From assembly GCA_024137785.1 (NCBI GenBank), contig JAHRHZ010000282.1, forward strand, positions 557,138 to 621,137: a stretch of 64,000 nucleotides of DNA, written 5' to 3'. Shown piece after piece: positions 7,201 to 63,390 of the stretch. Source of the DNA: Ginglymostoma cirratum (lineage: Eukaryota). Made by a program: the position numbers and the translations under genes. The first letter of the stretch is position 1, and every line of letters starts with the position of its first letter. Below the pieces are notes generated by a model. The model made no database searches. It was not told the DNA's origin and saw nothing but the letters and a program-made list of their open reading frames with translations.

Positions 7201-7641
7201 CATACTACACAGAGCAATTTTATTCAGCTATGCATCTGTACCATTCCCATAAAAGTGGAAACCAATCAGTCCCCAAACCCTTGCTGTTTCTCAATAGTGC
7301 AACACAGATTGCCTGTTCCAATATTTATCCAATTAAAATACAAACGTTATTGATGAATATGCTCATAATACCCATCTCTTGTGTAAAATGTAACGCGCCA
7401 TCTTTACTGATTAATTTACATTAATAGTGTGTAAAGTCGTAGCAACATATATAAGACGTTAGTTTACAAGAAACACAGAATTCTTCCTATGAATAAGACG
7501 CTTATTCTATAGACAGTGGATTGCTAAACAATAGTTGCCATTTACTCACGGAGAGTTTGGCGTCAACCGATCCCGAACACCCTCCATCCGCAATCCACAA
7601 ACCCTGGCCTCAAAGTCCAGCTCTACAAACCTCTGCAAATA

Positions 7642-7984
7642 TGGTTTTGTACAGATCCTTCTGTGTCACTATTTCTGCAATCCCTACCATGTTCAGGTTC
7701 TTGTACAGATCTCTCCGTGGTCTGTACCACTGTGTGTCTGCAATTACACCATAATCTTTTTTTTTTTTAATACAACTCTCTCCCAGTTCTGTCTCACTGC
7801 ATTGGTAATCCCCACCATGCTCAGGTTCTTGTACAGCACACTCGTGGTCTGTATTACTGTGTGTCTGCAATCCCACCATAATCAAACTTTTATACAGCAC
7901 TCTGCCAGTTCTGTATCACTGCATTGGTAATCCCCACCATGTTCACGTTTTTGTACTGTTCTCTCCGTGCTCTCTATCTCTGTG
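7642..7984 (-). repeat. Tandem array of about 6 RSS-containing units (~60-65 bp period, alternating A/B types)
   Basis: RSS-like units at 7946-7984, 7885-7923, 7824-7861, 7763-7801, 7696-7734 and 7642-7673, separated by related ~21-28 bp linkers containing AATCCC(C)ACCAT. Confidence 0.85.
7946..7984 (-). other. 23-RSS of the supporting V-delta
   Basis: CACAGAG-ATAGAGAGCACGGAGAGAACAGT(23)-ACAAAAACG. Confidence 0.92.
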
Positions 7985-8294
7985 TGTGCCGAGATCCGAA
8001 TACTTGCGCAGTAATAAACAGCAGAATCAGCGTGTTGAATTTGAGAGATCATTAACCGATAGATTTTCGCCCCAGGATCAATAGATGCAGACACCCGTCC
8101 CCTCGCAGCATTTTCTTTATTCTTCTCTCCTGCAGTGTCTCTTTGAAGGAGATACTTCAGAGCCTGTCCTGGGGTTTGACTGTACCAGTAGAGTGAGTAC
8201 TGACAGAATCCTGAATATGTACAGCTTAGAGTAACGGTGTCACCAGCAGCAGAAGTTTGTACAGGCAGACCCTGGGACACCAGGGAACTGGAAT
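7985..8294 (-). CDS. Leaderless supporting TCR-delta V exon of NAR-TCR
   Basis: Acceptor CCCACAG at 8295. The phase-1 frame DSSSLVSQGLPVQTSAAGDTVTLSCTYSGFCQYSLYWYSQTPGQALKYLLQR...DSAVYYCASIRISA has canonical C/W/C plus a CDR1 Cys and is in frame with the J donor. No intact leader lies upstream. Confidence 0.93.
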
Positions 8295-8743
8295 CTGTGG
8301 GACGACACTGAACATTATTAATTATTCAGATACAGTTTACACAGGGAAATTGTAGTTAACCAAAAAATCGTTCTGATTTCTTTGACAGTTAACTTTGTCT
8401 ATAGTCCATTTGAACCTGTCCTCTTTTATCGAACCATAAACTGCTGAAGAGATAAGGTGACATTTTCTTTCATAAGTTGCCTTCGTATGATATGGAATGA
8501 ACTGCCAATACGATTGGTTGGAACTGATTGAACAATAAAATGGGTAATGGACAACAGATGAACAGGCAGAAAACGCAGGGCTATGGGGAGATAACAAATA
8601 CAGTAGAATCAGTTGAAATGAACTCTAAAGAGAACTGTAACCACACGACTGCTGAATGCTATCCTATATGATTCTGTGGTGTACTTTATATTTCTTGTTC
8701 TATTTACTGTGGTGAAACGCTAACCCGAGGGAACTTCTCATAC

Positions 8744-8803
8744 TCGTTGAGACTATTTACAAAAACAGCTGTCCAAAAGTAACCCAACAGAGATGTGCCT
8801 CAA
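8744..8803 (-). pseudogene. Probable decayed leader exon upstream of the supporting V-delta
   Basis: TTG in place of ATG, then RHISVGLL, a +1 frameshift, WTAVFVNSLN and a GTATGA donor-like site. It resembles the leader at 61454-61514 (VIGLFWTA). Confidence 0.45.
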
Positions 8804-10785
8804 TGCACACTAAGATCCAATATGAACGAAGTAATTGATCAGAACCAATTAGGTCAATCGTTTTCTAAACTTTCCTCTGTACATGAAATTCTACTAGATT
8901 TTCGATCTACTTGTTTGCTTTGTTTCTTTTTTTAAAATCAGATCCATTTGTTTTATGTTTGCTTCTAACGGTAATTATTTCAATTTAGTATTATTTTATT
9001 TCTGCATTTTCTTCGCCCCTTTTTCTTTTCTGGCGATCGTAGATACCTATCCCAGATGTCTCTCAATACTCGGTTGGGATCAGACTGCACTAATTGTATG
9101 TTTTTTTTTTGTTGCTCATTGGGAATCCACTTCCAGCTCTCTCTCAATTACAATTCCTCGCATCAATTTATTGACTCCTGGATATTCTGGATGGAGATCT
9201 TTATAGTTTTCTCGGAAAGCTGAAGATAAGGATAGTTCATTCTACCCAACCGATTTATGGCTGTGTATATAACTCAACGTCCACTCCCACGCGAACTCTA
9301 ATCAGCGTTATCTATTCCGTACGTTGAGTAGATGTATTTGGTTCTTCTTCAGTTTTCTGAAAACTCCATAAATGACTCAATGCATTGTTACATATTTAGT
9401 CTGTTTCGCGGCAAGTTCCACATTCCACCACGCTTATTGTTCACTTGTTCAAGTTCGTGAGTTGATTTGTTTCGTTAGTGAACATGATGTAATAATGGCC
9501 CTTTGCTCGTGGTTCAGTCTCATCCATCCCATTCACTAGATCATGGTATATAAGATTTCTATGAAGCCACATTGCACTTCTCTGTTTCTCTGGCAAGACA
9601 GCCAACTTTTAAACCCCCACTGTTTTCTGAGGTCCAGAATGCCACAGACTCAAAGCAATTGTTTGATTGAATTATTTGCTCTCATCCCAATTCTATGTCC
9701 TAAGCCTTAATCTCTAAGTGTGGCCACTGTATGGACGTTTTATTCTCGAGTATATTGCCCCAGATGCCTATCCCTTAATAATCGTATATGTTCAAATTAG
9801 ATCACTTTTCCTTCTTCTAAGCGCTATGTTATGTAGCTTAGACTTCACAATCGCTTCACAAAGGACAACAACTTTATCTCAGGAGATTGCCTGATGAATC
9901 TTAGCTGCACTTGTTCCAAAAAAAATCGATTAGAGAGGAGACGTTTATCCACCATTTCCTTCTCTATATAAAGCTCACTCTGGTGAGGATTGTCTCTTCG
10001 ACAATGCCCCAGAAATTGTGACATATTCCTCTCCCTTTTGATGTATCACTTCTTGCTGGTTCTAAATGGGCATTCTCCCAGTTTGCATCTTTTCCCTTAA
10101 GCAGTTACCTTACAACAAATTGATACCTCAAAACATCTACATTTTAAAAAAGTGCTTACAATTGCACATTTAGGTCTGAGTTTGGAAAAGTGAGAAAATG
10201 GTTCGTTATATCAAGACATATATGAAAGTTGTGTAAAGAAATGTCAAGCCAATCATTCTTATCACAGGTTCCCCAAAAAGGAAACTTCATCAAGGCATAC
10301 AATTGGATCTGTTAGAATTGACTTTCGATGAATGATGCTTCCAAATTTCTGGTCAGACAAAAATTTTTTTGTAACTTTTCAATTCCGGGGCCTTATCTGG
10401 ACTTCAAGATTTGCTCGGTACAGTACTTTGTGTGCCTCTTCCCGTGACCTAAGCAGTCCTCAGTCACTGGTAAAGTCTTGAATTACCTGGTGTCGTTAGT
10501 GTTCCTAGTGTCGGCACTCTCCACCATATTGATGGGGTCCCACTACTGACCTGTAAAAAATGTCCCAGGTGCATTGACACTGCCGACTTTGAGCCCGGCG
10601 TGACAATACTTTCTTCGGGACAAATCAGGACTCGACTTCCCTATTCTGCAAACTATTTGGAAACTGTGACAGAGCCGATTACTTCCAAAAGTTTTGTTTC
10701 AATTTCTTTGCAACTGAAGGTCATAATAATAAACTGAACATTAACTGACACAGTCTATAACAAGGTGAAGTGAAGATTCACTTAC

Positions 10786-10874
10786 CAGCTGTGACAGTCA
10801 CCACCGTCCCGGATCCATCTACATAGTAATAATATCACAGTATTGCTCCTGTCAGCTTCCACTGAACAAGAACC
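10786..10874 (-). CDS. NAR-TCR J segment (coding 10835-10786, YYYYVDGSGTVVTVTA) with 5' 23-RSS
   Basis: GGTTCTTGT-23bp-TACTGTG, then a GxGTxVTV motif and a phase-1 GTAAGT donor at 10785. Confidence 0.93.
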
Positions 10875-11187
10875 AATGGGACCTCAAAGTGTTGAGAAAT
10901 TATTTGCACGCTGCATTATCAATCCAATTATTCAGGATATTTACATAAGTATCAACATTCGCTGTCTCCAAGTTTTCTTTGGTTCAAGTTCACCCCCTGA
11001 TTTTCTTTTCTGTCAAATGTTGAAAGAGCACGGGGGTGCATATCTTCACTTCATATACGGGGAGAAAAATCAAACAATGAAATTAATGGCTATTGGATAG
11101 TCAAAAGATCAACCCATACCACAGCGAAGGGAACTTCAAGCTGGCTATTGACTATTGGGCCGGAGATCTTATTTTTTATTCGGCAGA

Positions 11188-11259
11188 GGTATTTGGTAGG
11201 GCTCCTTTAACTGTGCCTTCTCCCAAAATTACACAGCATTACAAGTCTGTGTAAAACAT
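11188..11259 (-). other. NAR-TCR D segment (core 11216-11231, TAATTTTGGGAGAAGG) with 12-bp RSS on both sides
   Basis: Minus strand reads ATGTTTTAC-12bp-TGCTGTG [16-nt D] CACAGTT-12bp-CCAAATACC. It lies between a 23-RSS V and a 23-RSS J, as the 12/23 rule requires. Confidence 0.85.
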
Positions 11260-11575
11260 CCCTGGACTAGGTGAGATTTGGGACTTCACAGATGGACTGG
11301 AATTCCTAATTCCAATTTGCAGAACAGGATCACAACTCACGTCAGTGTCCTTTAACTGTAATCAGTCTTTCTTAACTTCCATTCACCCACGCCAATCTCG
11401 ACAAAGTCATCACCGTCCAAACACACTTGTCTTCTGTGAAAATCAAGATGCTGTTGACAATAATGCAGTCGAATTATAAACTGGACTGTGAGTCAGAAGC
11501 TGTGAAGCAGAACTGTGTGAATTTCCGGCAGATTAACTCGGTTTTCAATTTGTTTTTGTAATAATCTCCAGAGAG

Positions 11576-11614
11576 AGTTTTTTGAACAGCGAGAATCTGA
11601 GGCCTATCACTGTG
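11576..11614 (-). other. 22/23-bp-spacer RSS of the NAR V
   Basis: CACAGTG (11614-11608) + ATAGGCCTCAGATTCTCGCTGTT + CAAAAAACT (or a 22-bp spacer with TCAAAAAAC). Confidence 0.9.
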
Positions 11615-11910
11615 TATGTTATACCAGTACTGAGCTTTACAGTAATAGGTCGCGGTGTCTTTAACTTTGACGTCACGAATTTCCAACGAAAATGTCTTTT
11701 CCCCTTTATTTGTGGACATAATAAATCTCCCACCGCCAGAGATCCGCTCCCATTCCGTCGTTCCCTGTATTTGTCTGAAGAATTGACCACTCTCAAAATA
11801 ATAGTCATAGAAAAAATGGTAATCATTAAAAACACAGGTGATTGTGAGCGATTGACATTCCTTCCTGGTCACTGTTGTTGGGCTTTGTGTCACTGACTGA
11901 CAGAAAGAAC
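11615..11910 (-). CDS. IgNAR-like V exon of NAR-TCR (membrane-distal V)
   Basis: Open frame QSVTQSPTTVTRKECQSLTITCVF...FFRQIQGTTEWERISGGGRFIMSTNKGEKTFSLEIRDVKVKDTATYYCKAQYWYNI. It has both canonical Cys, the IgNAR-type FR2/CDR2 deletion, an extra FR1 Cys (RKEC), and a following RSS. Confidence 0.93.
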
Positions 11911-12041
11911 CTGGAAATTAAAGAGAGAGACGTGAGTGGGCATCATCAGTGACCTACACTACGCGATTAAAGTTCTGATGAACTCGGGCAACAGTATAGT
12001 TTTAAATCCACACAATGTTGATTGCTGTGATCGGTACTCAC

Positions 12042-12084
12042 AGGGTAAACAAACGCACAAGATCAAAACAAGGAAGGTTTCCAT
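12042..12084 (-). CDS. Leader exon of the NAR-TCR V segment (METFLVLILCVCLP)
   Basis: ATG at 12084, hydrophobic 14 codons plus 1 nt, then GTGAGT donor. The phase-1 splice to the acceptor TTTCCAG at 11911 gives an in-frame METFLVLILCVCLPCSFCQSVTQSP. Confidence 0.93.
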
Positions 12085-12274
12085 CGTTCACTTATCCAGA
12101 GATGATGGATTAGACGACGTGTAACTGCAGACTACTCTGGGACACTGGGCTGTGAGCTGGGCTGAAACATTTCAGAAGGATCGAGGTATTTGCAGGGGGA
12201 AGCTTCCGTGAGGTGACTGACAGACTAAATGGATCCAGGGTCTGTGGGTATGCTTTATCTGAATAAACGGTAGG

Positions 12275-12306
12275 TTTAAATAGGGAGCCTGCAGTGTTAT
12301 GTCACT
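12275..12306 (-). promoter_or_regulatory. Candidate NAR-TCR V promoter: CRE-like decamer plus TATA-like box
   Basis: AGTGACATAA (12306-12297) matches the TCR V-beta decamer AGTGAYRTCA at 9/10. It is 14 bp upstream of TATTTAAA (12282-12275), about 190 bp before the ATG. Confidence 0.5.
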
Positions 12307-15300
12307 TCACCAACATTGTCAGCTGGTAATGAAATCCCCTCCCACAGTCGCCAATTGGACAGGGGTAGAGTGGGGATGAAGGTGGGGGCATGTCTGTCAG
12401 AAATCGCTGAAATCCTCCTTGGCCCTGCAGTAACGAGTTGGGCTCTCAGCCTGTGTTTCTATTAGTTGGTATGTGTTGATCAAAGAATGGGAGGGTGTGA
12501 TGCTGGAAGAACCCAAAAATAACATTCCACATTCCACCATCCTCACCAAGACTTTCTCTTAATCCCTGCCCCGCCCCGCCCCGATCTCATTGCAATTCAC
12601 CAGTACTGGTGATTATTTAATGCTGAGCAGGTCAGAGGGACCTCGGTCAAATATCTGTTCAGGAAAACTGAACCTCAAAGCCAATGGTTTCACCCAGTCT
12701 TGCAACTGAGGAGCAGGTTACAAGATGATATAGACCTGTAAGAATGTTGTGGTGAATATACCTAATTTACATTCTCACACACTTAAACAATCAGTTTCTG
12801 CAACGGCTCTTTCTGACTGTTATTATCTAACCCTAAAAAGTATTCTATGTTTTAATCAGATCATCGCCCATTCTTCAAAACTGTACAAAACACAGTCTAA
12901 GCCTCCTGTAGGACAATCTGACCATTCCAAAAATTAGTCTGATGAATCATTGTCACTCTCCCTCTCTGTAATCTGGGTTAGTGCTGGTATTGGGAAGTGT
13001 TTGTTCAGAAGGAGACTCATCTAAGGCGTTACCACGAACTAACGATGTGCAACGTGCAGTGAATGTTCCCATGTCTGCTCTTCTAATTTTACAATGTTAC
13101 TGATTTTTTGTTTTTTCCCCCTCAGCTAAAACTTGTTCTGGATGTAACACTGAGACCAAGAAGGTTTTAAGTCTGTTAAAGTTAATTCCCTATCCATTAC
13201 ACGGGAAGATTATACTGGCACTCAGCTTGTATGATATCAATAAACAAGAAACTTTCAACACTTTTATTAAAAGAGGAAGTGCTGGAGAAACTCAGCAGCA
13301 CTGGCAGCATCTACAGAAATTGCAACAGTTAATGCTCCGATTCTATTTACTCTCTTTTGAAATGTGTTTGACAGATCTGCTAGAAATGATGAATTTCTCC
13401 AACACTTTAATACCGTTATTTCAGATCTCCAGTATCTGCATCATTTTGGGCTATGGACCCACGTATATTGAGCACCATTTCCGGACACACTTTATCACTG
13501 ATTTTAAATGCTCTACCGTTGGTGACCGTACCTTGAGCTGCTTGGAACCTTAAATCTGGAATTTCCTCCTGAAATATTTGAAAGCATTTTTAACTTCCTT
13601 TTCGTACTTGCAAACACTCCTTGTAACCAATCACCCTGGTCAAGCTTTTGATCAGGTAGTTTAATATACTTTAAGTCCTGTGAAACTCCGAGGCACTTTG
13701 CTACGTTTAAACTCTCGTCTTTAAATTGTTGTTATTAAGTGAGACCTGATTACTGACTGAGTGAAACAGGCTGTACCAGTGTAACTCCCAAGAGACAGCT
13801 TGTTATAACAGAGCAAGGAACAAGTGAGCACTGAATCTACTGTATTATCCCTGTTCTCTGTATCGGGTCACTGTCCTCTCTTTGTATTATTGCAGAGCTA
13901 AGAGCCATTGGATCCCTTGTATTACCCCTGTTGTCAAGGTCATGTAACAATACTTTTGATGAAGAGCGAGGTGAGACAGTAGAATCTGAGGAGTGATGGG
14001 TAAGCAATGGAGGAGTAACACAGACAGGGCAGTTACCTAATGCTCCCTTTCATTACTGAGACCAAACTGTGGTTTTGTAAGAAGAATATTACATGCTGTT
14101 TGGAGCCTGCAAACATGACTGCGTTGTGAAGGTGTTCTCTTTCCCAGAACGGATTCAGACCTCGTTCTGAAGAAGGACCACTGGAATTGAAACATTGACC
14201 GTGCTGGAAAAAAGCTCGCTCTAACATCTATTCCATCAGGTAAGTGTCTCTCTGGTTAACATACCCTCTAATAGAAAAAAGCGAGACAACAACAATGTCA
14301 TTGCGAAAAGGTGCACCCTCTTCATTTTTTACCTGGGGTCTACAGGTTAGGATTTGGCTCTCGCGCTGATAGATTTGCTTCGATCAACAAGGCAGGATTT
14401 ACAATGTAATGGAGTCACCCAATATATCACAAATGGAATGTGATCAGATTTTGAATGTGGAAGTAAAAAACACTATCCACAGTAGAGCGAAACTGTGCCT
14501 GTGTTGTGTGTCTGGACAAGGCCACAGTCAGTCATCAGACCATTCCGCCAACACATTTCACCTAATCATAGACCCCATATCACCCAATTAACTTCTTTTC
14601 TGCTCTGGCTCACTATCAACAATCGTTCATCTGCCTTATTTTATTTCTGTCTCTTTCAACAGGAAAGGCTCCAGCTGCACTCATCTGCTCACTCCACCAC
14701 TCCCCCTAAACCATCAACATAAATAAAACGTTTTCACTAAATAAAACAAAGAATTACAGATGCTGAAGATTTGAAACTCAATAGCTCTGGCAGTCTCTGT
14801 GGAGCGAAAGCAGAGGTAACGTTCCAAGTGAAGTGACTGTTGTTCAGAATTTCCTGACTGCTTCCAGTTCCAATTTTAAGTATAGAAAGTTTCTCCTTCT
14901 CTAGCACTGGATGTTAGAAATAAAGGGCAGTAGTTGATTTGGAGGGAAATCTGGTGATACCTGCTGCCCTGGTCCTTCCAGGTGATGGAGCTGGATGGGT
15001 TAGGAGATTCTATCAAATTTCCGATGCTATTGTAGAAATATAAAACCTCTCTCATTTTCCGTCTGCCTCTCCTATCTCTATTTTTCCTCAGATAGATGTC
15101 AGTGTATTGTGCAGATTCTTCTGCATCGCCGATCCAATTCCCTGAAGAATATTAGTGATAGAGTCTGGATTCAACGATAATATGACAGATTTTCTTGGAC
15201 ACACTTTCCCCGCATTGTCCCTAGAAATTATCAGATTCCTTCAACTCAATTTCACAATCTGCCTTTGTGATTTGAATGCTCGCTCTCAGATGTTCTTTTT

Positions 15301-15999: not shown

Positions 16000-17200
16000 A
16001 AAGGTCAGAAATCAGACGACACCAGGTTATAGTCCAACAGATTTGCTTGAAAACACAACCTTTCGGAGCCTCGCTTCTTCTTGAGATGTAAGTGATACAG
16101 ATAGTATCAGACTCAGAATTTAAGATTAAAAGATCAAAGTGTCACACCATTGATGAGAATGCACTAAATAAACCCAAGATGTTGAATCTTTAGTCAGCCA
16201 GAAGATTTTAAATGATTAATATGTGTGTGCAAATTCCTGAATTCCATTGAAGGCCCCGTGCTATGAGGACTAAAGCTTTTATCAGTGTAAAGAAGAAATG
16301 ATATTTTAGATGAGACAATGCATGGTAAGTGTGAGAACGTGTTTATAATCTGTTTGTGAGTTGGTTTGGGGTAAGACTGGTTTTATTTCGAAAGTAGCAA
16401 TTTATAAAATGCCACATTGTCTGACTGACGATAAATTCTGTGCTTATTGAACAAAATAGAATGCATCTGCAAATAGAAGTTCACNNNNNNNNNNNNNNNN
16501 NNNNNNNNNNNNNNNNNNNNNNNNNNNNNNNNNNNNNNNNNNNNNNNNNNNNNNNNNNNNNNNNNNNNNNNNNNNNNNNNNNNNNNNNNNNNNNNNNNNN
16601 NNNNNNNNNNNNNNNNNNNNNNNNNNNNNNNNNNNNNNNNNNNNNNNAAAGAGAGAGTGGGAGACAACGTGTGTGTGTGTGCATGTGTGTGAGAAAGAGA
16701 CCATGTATAGTGTGGGATAGAGAGTGTATGTGAGAATGTGAGTGTGTGTGTGTGGGGAGATCGAGTCAGAGGTAGAGAGAGTGTGTGCGTGTATGTGTGT
16801 GTGTCTGTGTTTCTGTGAGCGAACGAGAGGGAGAGTGCTTGAAAAACAATGTGTGTAATGGAGAGGATCAGCGCAGTTTGTGTATGTGAGAGAGAGGGAG
16901 AGAAACAGACTGTGTTTATGAAAATAGACGGTACATGTAATGAAGAGGATCTGCGTGAGAATTTGTGCGTGTGAATATGTTTGTGTAAATGAGTGTGTGT
17001 GTGTGAGTGTTTAGCGTGGAGGGGCCACTTGCAGTGCGACATGAACCCAAGATCCCGGTTCAGGCCAGTCCTCATGGTTTGCAAACTTGGCTATCAGCCT
17101 CTGCTTGACGACTCTGCATTGTTGTGTATAACGACTTCCGCCTTGGAGAAAGTTTACCAAAGATCCACGATGAACGTCCTTGACTTTAAGGTCGAAAACA
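16000..17200 (-). mobile_element. Penelope-like element 3' fragment with internal CA-rich tract (spans the assembly gap)
   Basis: GIY-YIG C-terminus LQGG..TQQ..QRLIAKF/GLNRDLGFMSH. Its 3' end is homologous to 52730-53240. Confidence 0.75.
16485..16647. other. Assembly gap (N run)
   Basis: Continuous run of N. Confidence 0.99.
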
Positions 17201-42238: not shown

Positions 42239-42545
42239 GACTTTGTCGTACAGATTCTGTCTCACAAACACCGGCCACAATCACAGTGAATGAAGGGGAA
42301 GATGGCCCGTTATTCTGTAATTACACAGCTACATCAAGCAGTAGTCCATACTTGTTCTGGTACCGTCAGCATTCCAGCGGTTCCATGGAGTATGTGCTAA
42401 AGAGAAACCAATATACCAGGAAAACAGAAAGACTTCCAGGAGACAGGTTTTCTTCGGAGTTTGATCATGTGAACCGGACTATCCAATTGAAAGTGTTGAA
42501 CACAGAACTGACAGACTCCGCAGTGTATTACTGTGCACTGTACCC
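42239..42545 (+). CDS. Intact TCR alpha/delta V exon
   Basis: Acceptor TCTTACAG, then GLCRTDSVSQTPATITVNEGEDGPLFCNYTATSSSSPYLFWYRQHSSGSMEYVLKR...DRFSSEFDHVNRTIQLKVLNTELTDSAVYYCALY with canonical C/W/C. Confidence 0.93.
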
Positions 42546-42584
42546 CACAGAGATTCAGAACTGGGCTGACCCCATACGAAAACC
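42546..42584 (+). other. 23-RSS
   Basis: CACAGAG-ATTCAGAACTGGGCTGACCCCAT(23)-ACGAAAACC. Confidence 0.92.
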
Positions 42585-51500: not shown

Positions 51501-51745
51501 CAAGACATGCGAAAGCAAAGCGTTTTTCTCCTTATCATTTAACATTTTATGCAAAGCCATAGATCATTACACTTTGTAGTAATAGTCAATAAGACTTTGT
51601 GGCTTCATCTGAATCGAATATTCAGGAACAGGAAGCAAGATTTTGGAATATCTTTATCATTTGTAATAAATATCTCATGGAAAAAGTTAAATACATCAGC
51701 AGACACATGGCACCACCAAGGTATTTTACAATTCATACTTTGTCT

Positions 51746-52015
51746 TACTGTGTCTCCTTTGCAAAGGGATATATTCCAGCATTTTCGAACATGGACTCAT
51801 CCATAGAGATGATATTGGGCTTGTTTGCTCGGTCAAAGGATAACGTGTAGTGGTCTGTAGACTCATTGCCCTGGTATACGGAACCGATAAATGTCGCAGC
51901 CGCTGTCAGTGTTTTCCTGTACCAGTTTATCTTGTCTGCCATACCAACGGAGAGCTGACAGTTCAATTCAACACGCTCAACCCGTTTAACAAATGATCTA
52001 CTGTGAGCTCTGATC
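51746..52015 (-). pseudogene. 5'-truncated V pseudogene abutting a Penelope-like insertion
   Basis: ERVELNCQLSVGMADKINWYRKT...HYTLSFDRANK...ENAGIYPFAKE followed by heptamer CACAGTA. The second Cys is lost, no correctly spaced nonamer follows, and no leader is visible. Confidence 0.75.
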
Positions 52016-52019
52016 TTCA

Positions 52020-52667
52020 CAATAGACAATGCCTCATGGCATCCTTGCCTGCAGCGTATGAGATAGACAATGTTTGCCGAGTTATAAGAGATTCTGCCTT
52101 GTACGGACTCCTGAAGGTGTGGAAGGACGCCCTCATAGGAACAGGATACGATGCTCAATTCATCGATCGCCACTTCCAACGTGCCACAGCGTAAAAACAC
52201 ACTGATTTCCTTAAAAGACGAAGACAGGATAAGTCCAGTGGGGTACCTTTCATTGTTCAATCTTCCTGGGAATTTTTTTCCGCTCACACACACACTCATG
52301 CACACGTATACATACAAACATTCACTTACACATGCACACACACGCACGCACATCCTCTCACACAGATCCTCTCTTGGACAGACACTATCTCCCCAGCAAA
52401 CACAGACACTATCACCCCACCCCACAAAAACACACAAACAGACACCCTCTCTCACACACAGCACTCTCTCTCCCCACCACATATACACACTGTCGCTCCC
52501 ACACTCGTACATACACTATCTCCCACATACGCACATTCTCTCGCACGTAAACAAATTCTCTCTCACTCTCCCCCCACACGCTCACAAACTCATACACATG
52601 CACGCAAACACATTGTCTCTCCGCCTCACACACGTTCAGTCTCTCTCTCCCTTACACACACACACAA

Positions 52668-56968: not shown

Positions 56969-57436
56969 GGTTTTTGTGCAGGGATTGCTGTATCTACAGC
57001 AGTGTGGGTGATGTGGCACAGAAATACACGGCACTGTTGTAGAGAAAAGCCATAGCAACATTTAAAGGAAACGTATTGTTTTCTTTGCACAAATTAGCAA
57101 ATTAGTCTTGAAAATCTTGAAACGTTGCTCCCCTCCCCGTTATGCATGCTTCTACTGAATATCTCGGAATTTCCCCAGGATACTGAATACACCAGAACAC
57201 AGTTCGAACAGAATTTGTCGAGTAACTGAAGTTCAGTGTTATGTTCTGTCGTTCCAGAAACATTACTTCTTGTAGATTCTGGAAAACTGTATCTTCACCA
57301 TTGGTCCCTGCAACAAAGTACAATCTATCAAATGTTTGGGAGAGAATACAACTCATGGAGCAGACAATGAACATTTAAACGTAGACTCACCACGCAGCAC
57401 AACCAGTATTATTAGTAAGGAGCAAAGGGGGCACAT
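56969..57436 (-). pseudogene. TCR alpha/delta V pseudogene (leader 57436-57391, V exon 57307-57007, RSS 57006-56969)
   Basis: Leader MCPLCSLLIILVVLR with GTGAGT donor. V reads GTNGEDTVFQ...ITLNFSY (Cys to Phe)...VFWCIQYPGE...QD*...NSAVYFCATS with an in-frame TAA. RSS is CACACTG-22bp-ACAAAAACC. Confidence 0.9.
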
Positions 57437-57984: not shown

Positions 57985-59200
57985 ATAGAACACAGAGCAT
58001 AGATTAGTACACCAAAGTACAGGCGCTTCTGCCCACAATGTTGTGCCGACCTGTTATCCTACTCTAAGACCAAACTGCCCTGCATACCGCACATTTTACT
58101 ATCATCGATGTGCCTATCCAAGAGTCCCTTAAATGTGCCTAATGTATCTGACTCCACTATCACCGCTGGCAGCGCATTCCACTCACCCACCACTCTGTGG
58201 GCAAAAACCTAGCTCTTACATATGCCCTGTACCTTCTGTTAATCACCTTAAAATTATGCCCCCTTGTAATAGTCATTTATACCCTGGGAAAAAGGTCTCT
58301 GGCTATCCACTCTATATGCCTTTCATTATCTTGGACACCTCTATTCAGTCACCTTTCATCCTTCTTTGCTCCAAAGAGAAAAGCCCTAACTCCCTCAACC
58401 TTTCCTCATAAGACCTGCCCTCCAGCCAAGGCACCATCCCTTTGTGGGATCTTTGGGCTTCGACCCGAGGATCCCTCTGTTCCTCCACAATGCCAAGAAT
58501 CCGCCCATTAACCTTGTATTCTGCATTCAAATTCGACCTTCCAAAATGAATCACATCCCACTTTTCCAAGTTGAATTTCATCTGCCACTTCTTTTCCCAG
58601 CTCTGCATCCTGTCAATGTCCTGTTGCAACCGACAACAGTCCTACACACTTTCCACAACTCCACGAACCTCTGTGTCATCAGCAACCTTACTAACCCACC
58701 CTTCCAATTCCTCATCCAGTCATTTATAAAGATCACAAACAGCAGAGGTCCCAGAACAGATCCCTGCGGAACACCACTGGTCACGGAGCTCCAGGATGAA
58801 AACTTTCCATCTCCTATCACCCTCTTTCTTCTATTGGACCAACAATTTTGTATCCAGGTAGCCAAATTTTCCTGGATCCAATGTTTCCTTAATTTCTGAA
58901 TAAACCTACCATGGGGAACCTTACCAAACGCCTTTTGAAAACCCATAAACACCTCATCCACTGCTCTAACTTCGTCAATGTATTTTGTCACATCCTCAAA
59001 GAATCCACTACGACTTGTGAGGCATTACCTGTCCCTCACAAAACTATGTTGACTATTTCGAATCAAACTGTGCTTTTCCAAGTAATCATAAGTGCTATCT
59101 CGCAAAATCCTTTCCAAAAATTTGCCCAACATAGAAGTAAGACTGATTGGTCTGTAATTACCAGGGTTAACCCTATTCCCTTTCTTCAACAAGGGAATAG
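57985..59200 (-). mobile_element. CR1 LINE fragment with internal deletion
   Basis: [12 protein letters not shown]...[22 protein letters not shown]; [11 protein letters not shown]; SYEERLRELGLFSLE. Confidence 0.88.
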
Positions 59201-61964: not shown

Positions 61965-63390
61965 AGGTTTTGGAGTAGATTTATAGCTCGAGTTGTGGAT
62001 GTTGAGTTGGTTGGCTCGGCAAGCTGGTTTCTTGTTTCGCAGTCTCTTCGTTACCATGCTGGGTAACATCCGCAGTGCAGCCTCCGATGAAGCGTCGGTG
62101 TGTTTTACCGCCTGAATTTTAAACTCTGGAGTCCATTGAGTTGGATTGCCTCATTTCCGGTTTTCCCTTGTAGTGGAATGTGTACGGGATCAAGTCCAAT
62201 GTGTTTATTAATAGCATGCTTCGTATAGTGCCAGGCTTCTAGGAATTCTCGTGCCTGTCTCTGTCTAGCTTGTGCCAGGATTTTGGTATTGTACCAGTCG
62301 AAATGGTCGTTCTCCTTGTCCATGTGGATTGAGATGAGTCAGTATTGATCGTGTCATTTTGTAGCCAGTTGTTGCTCATGTACCCTTGTTGTTAGTTTCT
62401 TTCCGTTTGTCCGATGTAGTGTTTCTCACAGTCTCTGCAGGGAATCTGGTAGATGAAATTCGTCCTGTCCATGGCGGGGAGCGGGTCTGTAGTTGTCGTA
62501 GGGTTGACGTGGGCTTGTGTGCCACTCTGATGCCCAGCAGTCGTAGGAGTCTTGTGGTGAGTTCTGATGTTTTCCTGATCTAGGGTAGTGTGATGAGTGT
62601 GTTGGGGCATGTATTATGTTCCTGGTGTTGTTCGTGTGGGCATCTTCTGACTCAGTTTTTTGGATATCCATTATCCTTGAAAACCTGGAAGAGGTATTCT
62701 TCTTCTTGGAGTAGTTCCGTGTTGCTGCAATGTGTTTTTGCCCGTTTAAATAGTGTTTGCACGCAGCTTCGTTTGTGTGTGCTGGGATGGTTGCGATTGA
62801 AGTACAGTACCTGGTCCGTGTATGTGGCTTTTCCGTGTGCTTTCGTTTGCAGTTCCCCATTTGTCTTGCGCTCTACCATGACGTCCAGGAATAGGAGCTC
62901 TTTGTTCTTCTCCCCCTCACTGGTGAATTTTATTCTGGTGAGCGTGTTGTTTATAATTATGCGTGTCTCCTCTAATTTGGTCCGTTTAATGATGACAAAG
63001 ATATCGTCCACGTAGAGTATCCATAGTTTAGTTTGGATTCGTGGAAGGGCCGTCCTTTCTTGTCTTTGCATCACTGCCTCTGCTATGAGTCCAGAGATAG
63101 GTGATCCCATGGGTGTCCCTTTGATTTGTTCGTATGCTTGGCCGTTGAAGGCGAAGTGGGTAGTGAGTCATTGGTCGAATAGTTTGAGCATGTTGTCTGT
63201 GGAGGTGATTTCACTGGGGTCTTCCTGTTGTTCCAATAGTGTTGCCATTGTTTTCCTTGCTAGTTTTATGTCTATTGAGGTAAATAGGGCAGGGACATCA
63301 AAAGATATCATGGTTTCTTCATCGTCTATCCTTATGTCTTTGATGAAGTTGAGGAATTCTTGGGCTGAATGGATTGAGTGGGGTGACTTG
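61965..63390 (-). mobile_element. Penelope-like retroelement (RT plus GIY-YIG endonuclease), 5'-truncated
   Basis: ISFDVPALFTSI; MGSPISGLIAE...YVDDIFVII; YQIPCRDCEKHYIGQT; AREFLEAWH. Frameshifted. Confidence 0.9.

What the first reader, a model, noticed from the sequence alone, without database searches (positions are those of the whole stretch)
7946..12084. Complete germline NAR-TCR cassette: one chain needing two V(D)J rearrangements
Seen: leader, NAR-like V, D and J within about 1.3 kb, then a 2.5-kb intron whose phase-1 donor (10785) and acceptor (8295) join ...GTVVTVTA-DSSSLVSQ... in frame to a leaderless V-delta with its own 23-RSS. All splice sites, frames and RSS look intact. Established: this matches the cartilaginous-fish NAR-TCR, a two-V-domain TCR-delta chain, so the system is known. 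Inference: automated annotation would probably miss the D and J.
Basis: partly seen in the sequence, partly recalled or inferred. Interest (0 to 1): 0.75.

Follow-up and report, generated by a model that had tools for sequence, protein, structure and literature searches.

The report
Working shark NAR-TCR gene cassette
This stretch is an intact and expressed copy of the shark NAR-TCR gene unit, a known arrangement that puts an extra antibody-like tip on a T-cell receptor delta chain, so it is a well-supported but ordinary find.

Summary
On the minus strand lie a 43-nt leader exon (12084-12042), a 131-nt intron and a NAR-type V exon (11910-11615) with a 22/23-spacer RSS. A 16-nt D (11231-11216) has 12-spacer RSSs on both sides, the 5' one weak. 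A J (10835-10786) has a 23-spacer RSS and a phase-1 GTAAGT donor. After a 2491-nt intron comes a leaderless V exon (8294-7985) with a 23-RSS (7984-7946).

Public reads support the reading. One 427-letter contig of run X4 runs from the supporting V, across exactly the predicted intron, into the J. It then passes 24 junction letters holding 10 letters of the D core and enters the NAR V, in frame.

The published hallmarks of NAR-TCR are present: a Cys in the a-b loop, no Trp in the WYRK motif, and a CDR1 Cys in a leaderless delta V (PMC1845163, passages).

Two small corrections apply. The supporting V's heptamer is CACAGAG at 7984, not CACACAC at 7988. The RSS geometry is 23 / 12-12 / 23.

The system has been known since 2006. 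This scan has already noted at least six other NAR-TCR cassettes on other DNA of the same genome. The second rearrangement to C-delta was not seen.

The parts
12042..12084 (-). Leader exon (43 nt, ATG at 12084, phase 1)
   Evidence: Letters read. The splice 12042/11910 is seen in an X4 contig (joint 11908-12040 with 'cut +2', skipping 131 letters). That contig is only about 95% like this copy.
11911..12041 (-). Leader intron, 131 nt, GTGAGT...TTCCAG
   Evidence: joint
11615..11910 (-). NAR-type V exon (296 nt) with a Cys in the a-b loop and Phe in place of the canonical Trp
   Evidence: Pfam V-set E 3.4e-10. Best PDB matches are VNAR domains, E 3.9e-19. Five homologs at 59-75% identity. An X4 contig with 0 differences over 11645-11791.
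11576..11614 (-). RSS of the NAR V: CACAGTG, spacer 22 (or 23), TCAAAAAAC
11232..11259 (-). 5' RSS of the D: heptamer TGCTGTG (5 of 7), 12-nt spacer, weak nonamer ATGTTTTAC
   Evidence: Its use is implied by the D core in the X4 junction.
11216..11231 (-). D segment, 16 nt
   Evidence: Flanked by two heptamers. Ten consecutive letters of it stand in the 24 junction letters of the X4 contig. The chance expectation is about 1e-4 by simple counting.
11188..11215 (-). 3' RSS of the D: CACAGTT, 12-nt spacer, CCAAATACC
10836..10874 (-). RSS of the J: GGTTCTTGT, 23-nt spacer, TACTGTG
10786..10835 (-). J segment (50 nt, encodes ...DGSGTVVTVTA, phase-1 end) followed by the donor GTAAGT
   Evidence: Present as 10786-10829 in the X4 contig.
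8295..10785 (-). Intron of 2491 nt between the NAR J and the supporting V
   Evidence: Joint 8294-10786 skipping 2491 letters, ends CT..AC on the + strand, depth 32.5. It holds no ATG-started leader candidate with a hydrophobic core and a phase-1 donor.
7985..8294 (-). Leaderless supporting V-delta-type exon (310 nt, phase-1 acceptor, Cys in CDR1)
   Evidence: Pfam V-set E 2.4e-15. 46% identical to a Callorhinchus milii protein that keeps YSGFC. The X4 contig covers 7995-8294 with 1 other letter in 300.
7946..7984 (-). 23-RSS of the supporting V: CACAGAG, 23-nt spacer, ACAAAAACG

Best explanation
This is a functional germline NAR-TCR cassette in the V region of a shark TCR alpha/delta locus.

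In a developing T cell, RAG joins the NAR-type V (23-RSS) to the single D (12-RSS on each side), and the D to the cassette's own J (23-RSS). This builds a first V domain with its own CDR3.

The leaderless V 2.5 kb downstream is joined by a second, independent rearrangement to the D and J segments of TCR delta, which lie elsewhere in the locus.

Transcription starts before the NAR leader. Splicing removes the 131-nt leader intron and the 2491-nt intron, so the NAR J is joined in phase 1 to the supporting V. The chain then reads leader, NAR V domain, supporting V-delta domain, C-delta.

Three things are shown here: the intact germline parts, the first rearrangement using this D and J, and both splices. 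Three things are inferred from the intact 23-RSS and from the literature: the second rearrangement, the use of C-delta, and the proposed disulfide between the a-b loop Cys and the CDR1 Cys.
For: - Anatomy and frames.
- RSSs at all four coding ends, obeying the 12/23 rule (V 23 to D 12; D 12 to J 23).
- First V is of NAR type: VNAR structures are the best matches; 5 of 5 homologs keep the a-b loop Cys and FF(R/K)Q.
- Supporting V: V-set, with the CDR1 Cys shared with its single homolog, from elephant shark.
- No leader candidate in the intron.
- RNA form: the X4 contig joins the supporting V, the spliced 2491-nt gap, the J, 24 junction letters with the D core, and the NAR V. It is in frame (406 nt from the ATG).
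- Exon depths in X4 are 25-41, against 1-5 over the intron.
- The hallmarks match PMC1845163 (passages). The chain model matches PMC5931798 and PMC12227049 (passages).
Against: - The RNA support is one contig of one run whose library type is not on record. It is a de Bruijn contig, so a chimera between near-identical copies cannot be fully excluded.
- The genome holds several more cassettes (unchecked notes). X4 also has V-exon contigs 95-97% like this one, so part of the signal comes from paralogs or alleles.
- The contig ends at 7995, so no second CDR3 or C-delta was seen.
- Only 2 reads of the poly-A run X5 touched the stretch, and none of run X6 did.
- The D's 5' RSS is poor.
- No TCR constant exon is in the window.
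Confidence: 0.88

Rival explanations
1. The cassette in this window is intact but silent, and the X4 contig comes from a nearly identical paralog or allele elsewhere in the locus.
For: Scan notes list at least six more cassettes in the same genome. X4 V-exon contigs differ from the window at 4 of 147 and 7 of 147 letters. The spliced leader joint is seen only in the 95% contig.
Against: The spliced contig differs from the window at 1 of 300 letters over the supporting V, far closer than the 3-5% seen for the other V contigs. One V contig has 0 of 147 differences. All signals of this copy are intact.
Confidence: 0.08
2. It is a decaying pseudo-cassette, like another copy in this genome that a follow-up agent called dead.
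For: The D's 5' RSS is weak. A neighbouring V at 57 kb is broken. Note s1-879693 reports a dead copy elsewhere (unchecked).
Against: There is no stop or frameshift in any exon, and the splice sites are consensus. A productive in-frame VDJ transcript was found.
Confidence: 0.03
3. It is an IgNAR-type antibody cluster or a remnant of one, not a TCR element.
For: The best solved-structure matches of the first V are IgNAR V domains.
Against: The J splices to a V exon, not a constant exon. The cassette has one D, not three. It has the a-b loop Cys and lacks the canonical Trp, which PMC1845163 gives as marks of NAR-TcR V as against IgNAR V. No Ig constant exon follows.
Confidence: 0.01

Closest known systems
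NAR-TCR (NAR-TcR) of cartilaginous fish. Criscitiello, Saltis and Flajnik 2006 was not held and is known to me only through citing papers. The elephant-shark copies are in Venkatesh et al. 2007, PMC1845163.
   Same: A leader plus a NAR-type V with an a-b loop Cys and no Trp in WYRK. Its own D and J. The J is spliced to a leaderless V-delta with a CDR1 Cys. Two separate V(D)J rearrangements make one chain.
   Different: Nothing found. I could not compare the RSS spacer geometry (23 / 12-12 / 23), the 2.5-kb intron length or the RSS ladder with the 2006 germline figures.
IgNAR heavy-chain clusters of elasmobranchs
   Same: A related single-domain V: VNAR structures are the best PDB matches. As I recall, the V also has a 23-type RSS.
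   Different: As I recall, IgNAR has three D segments with 12/23 RSSs and a J with a 12-RSS that is spliced to constant exons. Here there is one D with 12/12, a J with 23, and the splice goes to a second V. The V here lacks the canonical Trp and has the a-b loop Cys.
TCR-mu of marsupials and monotremes (PMC3457774, passages)
   Same: It works alike: a three-domain chain with a rearranged, unpaired N-terminal V on a supporting V.
   Different: It is convergent rather than related. TCR-mu uses VH-related V genes in its own locus, and its supporting V is germline-joined or of low diversity.
Canonical TCR delta V-D-J
   Same: The supporting V has a 23-RSS like ordinary V-delta segments and sits among TCR alpha/delta-type V segments (V at 42256-42540).
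   Different: It has no leader exon and a phase-1 acceptor fed by an upstream J. It has an extra Cys in CDR1.

Membership tests
NAR-TCR | N-terminal V of NAR type with its own leader peptide | tested here: met
   The leader exon is open from the ATG at 12084 and hydrophobic. The V's best PDB matches are VNAR domains.
NAR-TCR | Cysteine in the a-b loop of the NAR-TcR V (PMC1845163) | tested here: met
   ...RKECQSLTITC... in the window. The Cys is kept in the 4 of 5 homologs that cover the region; the fifth is a fragment that starts later.
NAR-TCR | Canonical Trp of the WYRK motif is absent (PMC1845163) | tested here: met
   FFRQ here. FF(R/K)Q in 5 of 5 homologs. This position is aligned to W in VNAR 3B4.
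NAR-TCR | Own D and J with RSSs, rearranged separately from the delta V | tested here: met
   RSSs. A rearranged V-D-J junction using this D core and this J in X4.
NAR-TCR | NAR J spliced at RNA level to the supporting V-delta | tested here: met
   Joint 8294-10786 with GT..AG ends, depth 32.5, from one contig of one run.
NAR-TCR | Supporting V-delta lacks a leader | tested here: met
   Of 10 ATG-started candidates with a phase-1 GT in the 2491-nt intron, none has more than 5 hydrophobic residues in 8. No other joint into 8294 was listed.
NAR-TCR | Conserved Cys in CDR1 of the supporting V-delta (PMC1845163) | tested here: met
   CTYSGFCQYS in the window. The elephant-shark homolog P0006 has YSGFC at the same place.
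NAR-TCR | Supporting V rearranges to D-delta and J-delta and is expressed with C-delta | tested here: inconclusive
   The 23-RSS is intact. The X4 contig stops at 7995, and 2 X5 reads run on into unlike letters near the V end. No C exon is in the window.
NAR-TCR | Lies in the TCR alpha/delta locus | tested here: inconclusive
   One intact TCR-type V-set segment with a 23-RSS lies at 42.3 kb, and there are decayed V remnants. Other cassettes nearby are known only from unchecked notes.
IgNAR cluster | J spliced to IgNAR constant exons, with three D segments (recalled) | tested here: not met
   The J is spliced to a V exon. Only one D-like element with paired heptamers lies between V and J.

The most novel reading that the evidence does not exclude
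The cassette's RSS geometry is V 23, D 12 and 12, J 23. This resembles tetrapod IgH. As I recall, ordinary TCR delta and IgNAR have 23 / 12-23 / 12. The geometry may act as an insulator inside the delta locus.

It forbids direct V-to-J joining, so a D is always included. It also stops any upstream 23-RSS V, including the supporting V of a neighbouring cassette, from joining a NAR J. That would keep the two rearrangements of one chain from being mixed up.

If this rule holds for all cassettes and is not already in the 2006 paper, it would explain how two V(D)J reactions coexist on one gene.
Probability: 0.2. Interest if true: 0.45.

Novelty: already known. Interest (0 to 1): 0.2.

Why it matters
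It gives a clean, coordinate-exact and RNA-supported example of a doubly rearranging antigen receptor gene. Such an example is useful for annotating shark TCR loci, where gene callers tend to report only read-through V 'hypothetical proteins'. It adds no new principle. The one point that might repay a specialist's look is the 23 / 12-12 / 23 signal geometry and what it means for keeping the two rearrangements apart.

Tried and rejected
**Second D.** The 11 junction letters after the D core were searched in the window with up to 2 mismatches. This gave 7 hits against 5.7 expected, and none lies between the D and the J. I take them as N or P additions.

**Signal joint.** A loose end at 11240 in X4 looked at first like a signal joint. 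It resembles the germline D flank with a few changes, so I read it as a paralog.

**Alternative spacers.** By eye, I found no acceptable 12-spacer nonamer for the J and no 23-spacer nonamer for either D RSS.

**Species.** It was not determined. The nearest proteins are only 59-75% identical.

**Papers not held.** These were Criscitiello 2006, Ott 2021, Deiss 2019 and Criscitiello 2010. The germline details in print were therefore not seen. Table S1 of PMC12227049, which gives NARTCR V coordinates in four species, is a supplement and was not opened.

The big representative search, structure prediction and the protein atlas were not used, because the family scans settled the identity. No search or fold was made with a joined (spliced) model.
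Full report
**What is there.** Everything below is read on the minus strand.

- The leader exon is 43 nt (12084-12042). It encodes a hydrophobic signal peptide and ends in phase 1 before GTGAGT.
- A 131-nt intron ends TTCCAG.
- The V exon is 296 nt (11910-11615) and is open throughout.
- Directly behind it stands CACAGTG, then a 22-nt spacer (23 in the other register) and TCAAAAAAC.
- About 380 nt further on is a 16-nt D (11231-11216). It lies between TGCTGTG (12-nt spacer, weak nonamer) and CACAGTT (12-nt spacer, CCAAATACC).
- About 370 nt further is GGTTCTTGT, a 23-nt spacer and TACTGTG. These precede a 50-nt J (10835-10786), which encodes the usual G-x-G-T-x-x-T-V motif and ends in phase 1 before GTAAGT.
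- After 2491 nt the intron ends CCCACAG.
- A second V exon of 310 nt (8294-7985) follows in phase 1. Behind it stand CACAGAG, a 23-nt spacer and ACAAAAACG (7984-7946).

A whole-window RSS scan gave 38 hits against a mean of 8.95 in 20 shuffles. The cassette's signals sit exactly at the coding ends.

**What the two V exons are.** Both pass Pfam V-set.

The first V finds shark VNAR domains as its best solved relatives: E 3.9e-19 for the top match, and 25 of the first 26 rows are VNAR or new-antigen-receptor domains. The word search of 5.8 billion proteins found only 5 relatives, at 59-75% identity. Two of them are Chiloscyllium punctatum 'hypothetical proteins' that read through from the V exon. 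The four that cover the region keep the Cys before the first canonical Cys. All five have FF(R/K)Q where IgNAR V has the canonical Trp.

The second V found a single relative, a Callorhinchus milii protein at 46% identity that keeps YSGFC in CDR1.

Venkatesh et al. 2007 give exactly these marks for NAR-TcR V and its associated delta V. For the NAR-TcR V they name a leader, an a-b loop Cys and no Trp of WYRK. For the delta V they name no leader and a CDR1 Cys (PMC1845163, passages seen).

**Is the second V really leaderless?** In the 2491-nt intron, 10 ATG-started stretches end at a phase-1 GT. None has a hydrophobic core; the best has 5 of 8 residues. A leader-like stretch near 8757-8803 ends in a phase-1 GTAAAT but has no ATG. 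Another note of the scan calls it a vestigial leader.

**Expression.** The look-up of sequencing runs listed 10 runs of one organism. I laid 4 of them on 7500-12400.

Run X4 is kept as contigs and its library type is not on record. It holds a 427-letter contig of depth 32.5 that does the following:
- It covers 7995-8294 with 1 other letter in 300.
- It jumps from 8294 to 10786, skipping 2491 letters whose ends are CT..AC on the plus strand, that is GT..AG for the gene.
- It covers 10786-10829 of the J.
- It carries 24 letters that lie on neither side.
- It goes on from 11616 in the NAR V.

Ten consecutive letters of those 24 are the core of the predicted D. By simple counting of the 105 possible placements, the chance expectation is about 1e-4. 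No germline source for the other junction letters lies between the D and the J.

From the ATG to the J donor this form is 406 nt, which is phase 1 and fits the acceptor. Read by hand, the junction has no stop codon.

A second X4 contig shows the leader intron spliced out, but it is only about 95% like this copy. Other V-exon contigs differ at 0 and at 4 of 147 letters. Several related V genes or alleles are therefore expressed.

X4 depth is 25-41 over the V exons and 1-5 over the intron. X2 holds only unspliced pieces at depth 2-6. The poly-A run X5 gave 2 reads on the supporting V that run on into unlike letters near its end. X6 gave none.

**How it most likely works.** The 12/23 rule allows V (23) to D (12) and D (12) to J (23), and forbids V to J directly. 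The X4 junction shows that this D and this J are used.

The supporting V keeps an intact 23-RSS for a second rearrangement to D-delta and J-delta. RNA splicing then places the finished NAR domain on top of the V-delta domain. This is the published NAR-TCR model (PMC5931798, PMC12227049, PMC3457774 and PMC3149040, passages seen).

I did not see the second junction, C-delta or the proposed interdomain disulfide. These are inferred.

**Against, and limits.**
- The RNA evidence is one contig from one run of unrecorded library type.
- The genome has more cassettes (unchecked notes), so a paralog or allele as the source cannot be fully excluded. The 299 of 300 match argues for this copy.
- The D's 5' RSS is poor.
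- No constant exon is in the window.
- The founding paper and three others were not held.
[quoted passage not shown] It is a supplement and was not opened, and it may already cover this locus.
- No search or fold was run on a joined, spliced model. The exons were searched separately.

**Comparison and verdict.** All seven family features that could be tested were met. Two remain open: C-delta usage and locus membership. The cassette is not an IgNAR cluster, because it has one D, its J is spliced to a V, and its V lacks the canonical Trp. It works like marsupial TCR-mu but is not related to it (PMC3457774).

The system has been in print since 2006 and mapped in several genomes. The scan has already noted at least six further cassettes on other DNA of this genome. 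The finding is correct, well supported and ordinary.

The only point that might be new is the 23 / 12-12 / 23 signal geometry and its possible role in keeping the two rearrangements apart. I could not check that against the 2006 paper.

Noticed in passing
window 7621-7987: A tandem repeat of period 61/122 (2.5 copies of 122, 81% matches) lies directly behind the supporting V. Its units carry further RSS-like signals at 7861/7863 and 7734, the latter a perfect CACAGTG with ACAAGAACC. It is already noted by the scan as an RSS ladder.
   Followed up: partly
window 8757-8803 (minus strand): A leader-like stretch reads ...LRHISVGLLLDSCF and ends in a phase-1 GTAAAT donor about 460 nt before the supporting V. 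It has no ATG, and no spliced joint from it was listed. It may be the remnant of the V's lost leader.
   Followed up: partly
window 42256-42584 (plus strand): An intact TCR alpha/delta-type V-set segment (Pfam E 5.7e-13) has a 23-RSS at 42546 (CACAGAG, ACGAAAACC). It lies in the opposite orientation to the NAR-TCR cassette. I could not place a leader exon with the right phase upstream by eye.
   Followed up: partly
window 57012-57374 (minus strand): A decayed V segment has an in-frame stop and a substituted first Cys region. It still ends in ...SAVYFCAT and is followed at 57006 by CACACTG and a perfect nonamer ACAAAAACC. The first piece has no Pfam hit.
   Followed up: partly
window 51745-52512 (minus strand): A long ORF has a V-like tail (...VELNCQL...INWYRK...) embedded in Cys/Val-rich low-complexity translation. 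It has no Pfam hit.
   Followed up: no
window 11645-11908: Run X4 holds three different V-exon contigs: 0, 4 and 7 differences in 147 letters, at depths 13.8, 26.4 and 20.7. Several NAR-TCR V genes, alleles or mutated forms are therefore expressed together.
   Followed up: no
window 16485-16647: An assembly gap of 163 N sits inside CA/TG-rich low-complexity sequence. It was left untouched.
   Followed up: no
window 58581-58991 and 62655-63110 (minus strand): Reverse-transcriptase fragments of retroelements (Pfam RVT_1, E 1.4e-10 and 2.4e-4; only the first passes the curated cut-off).
   Followed up: no
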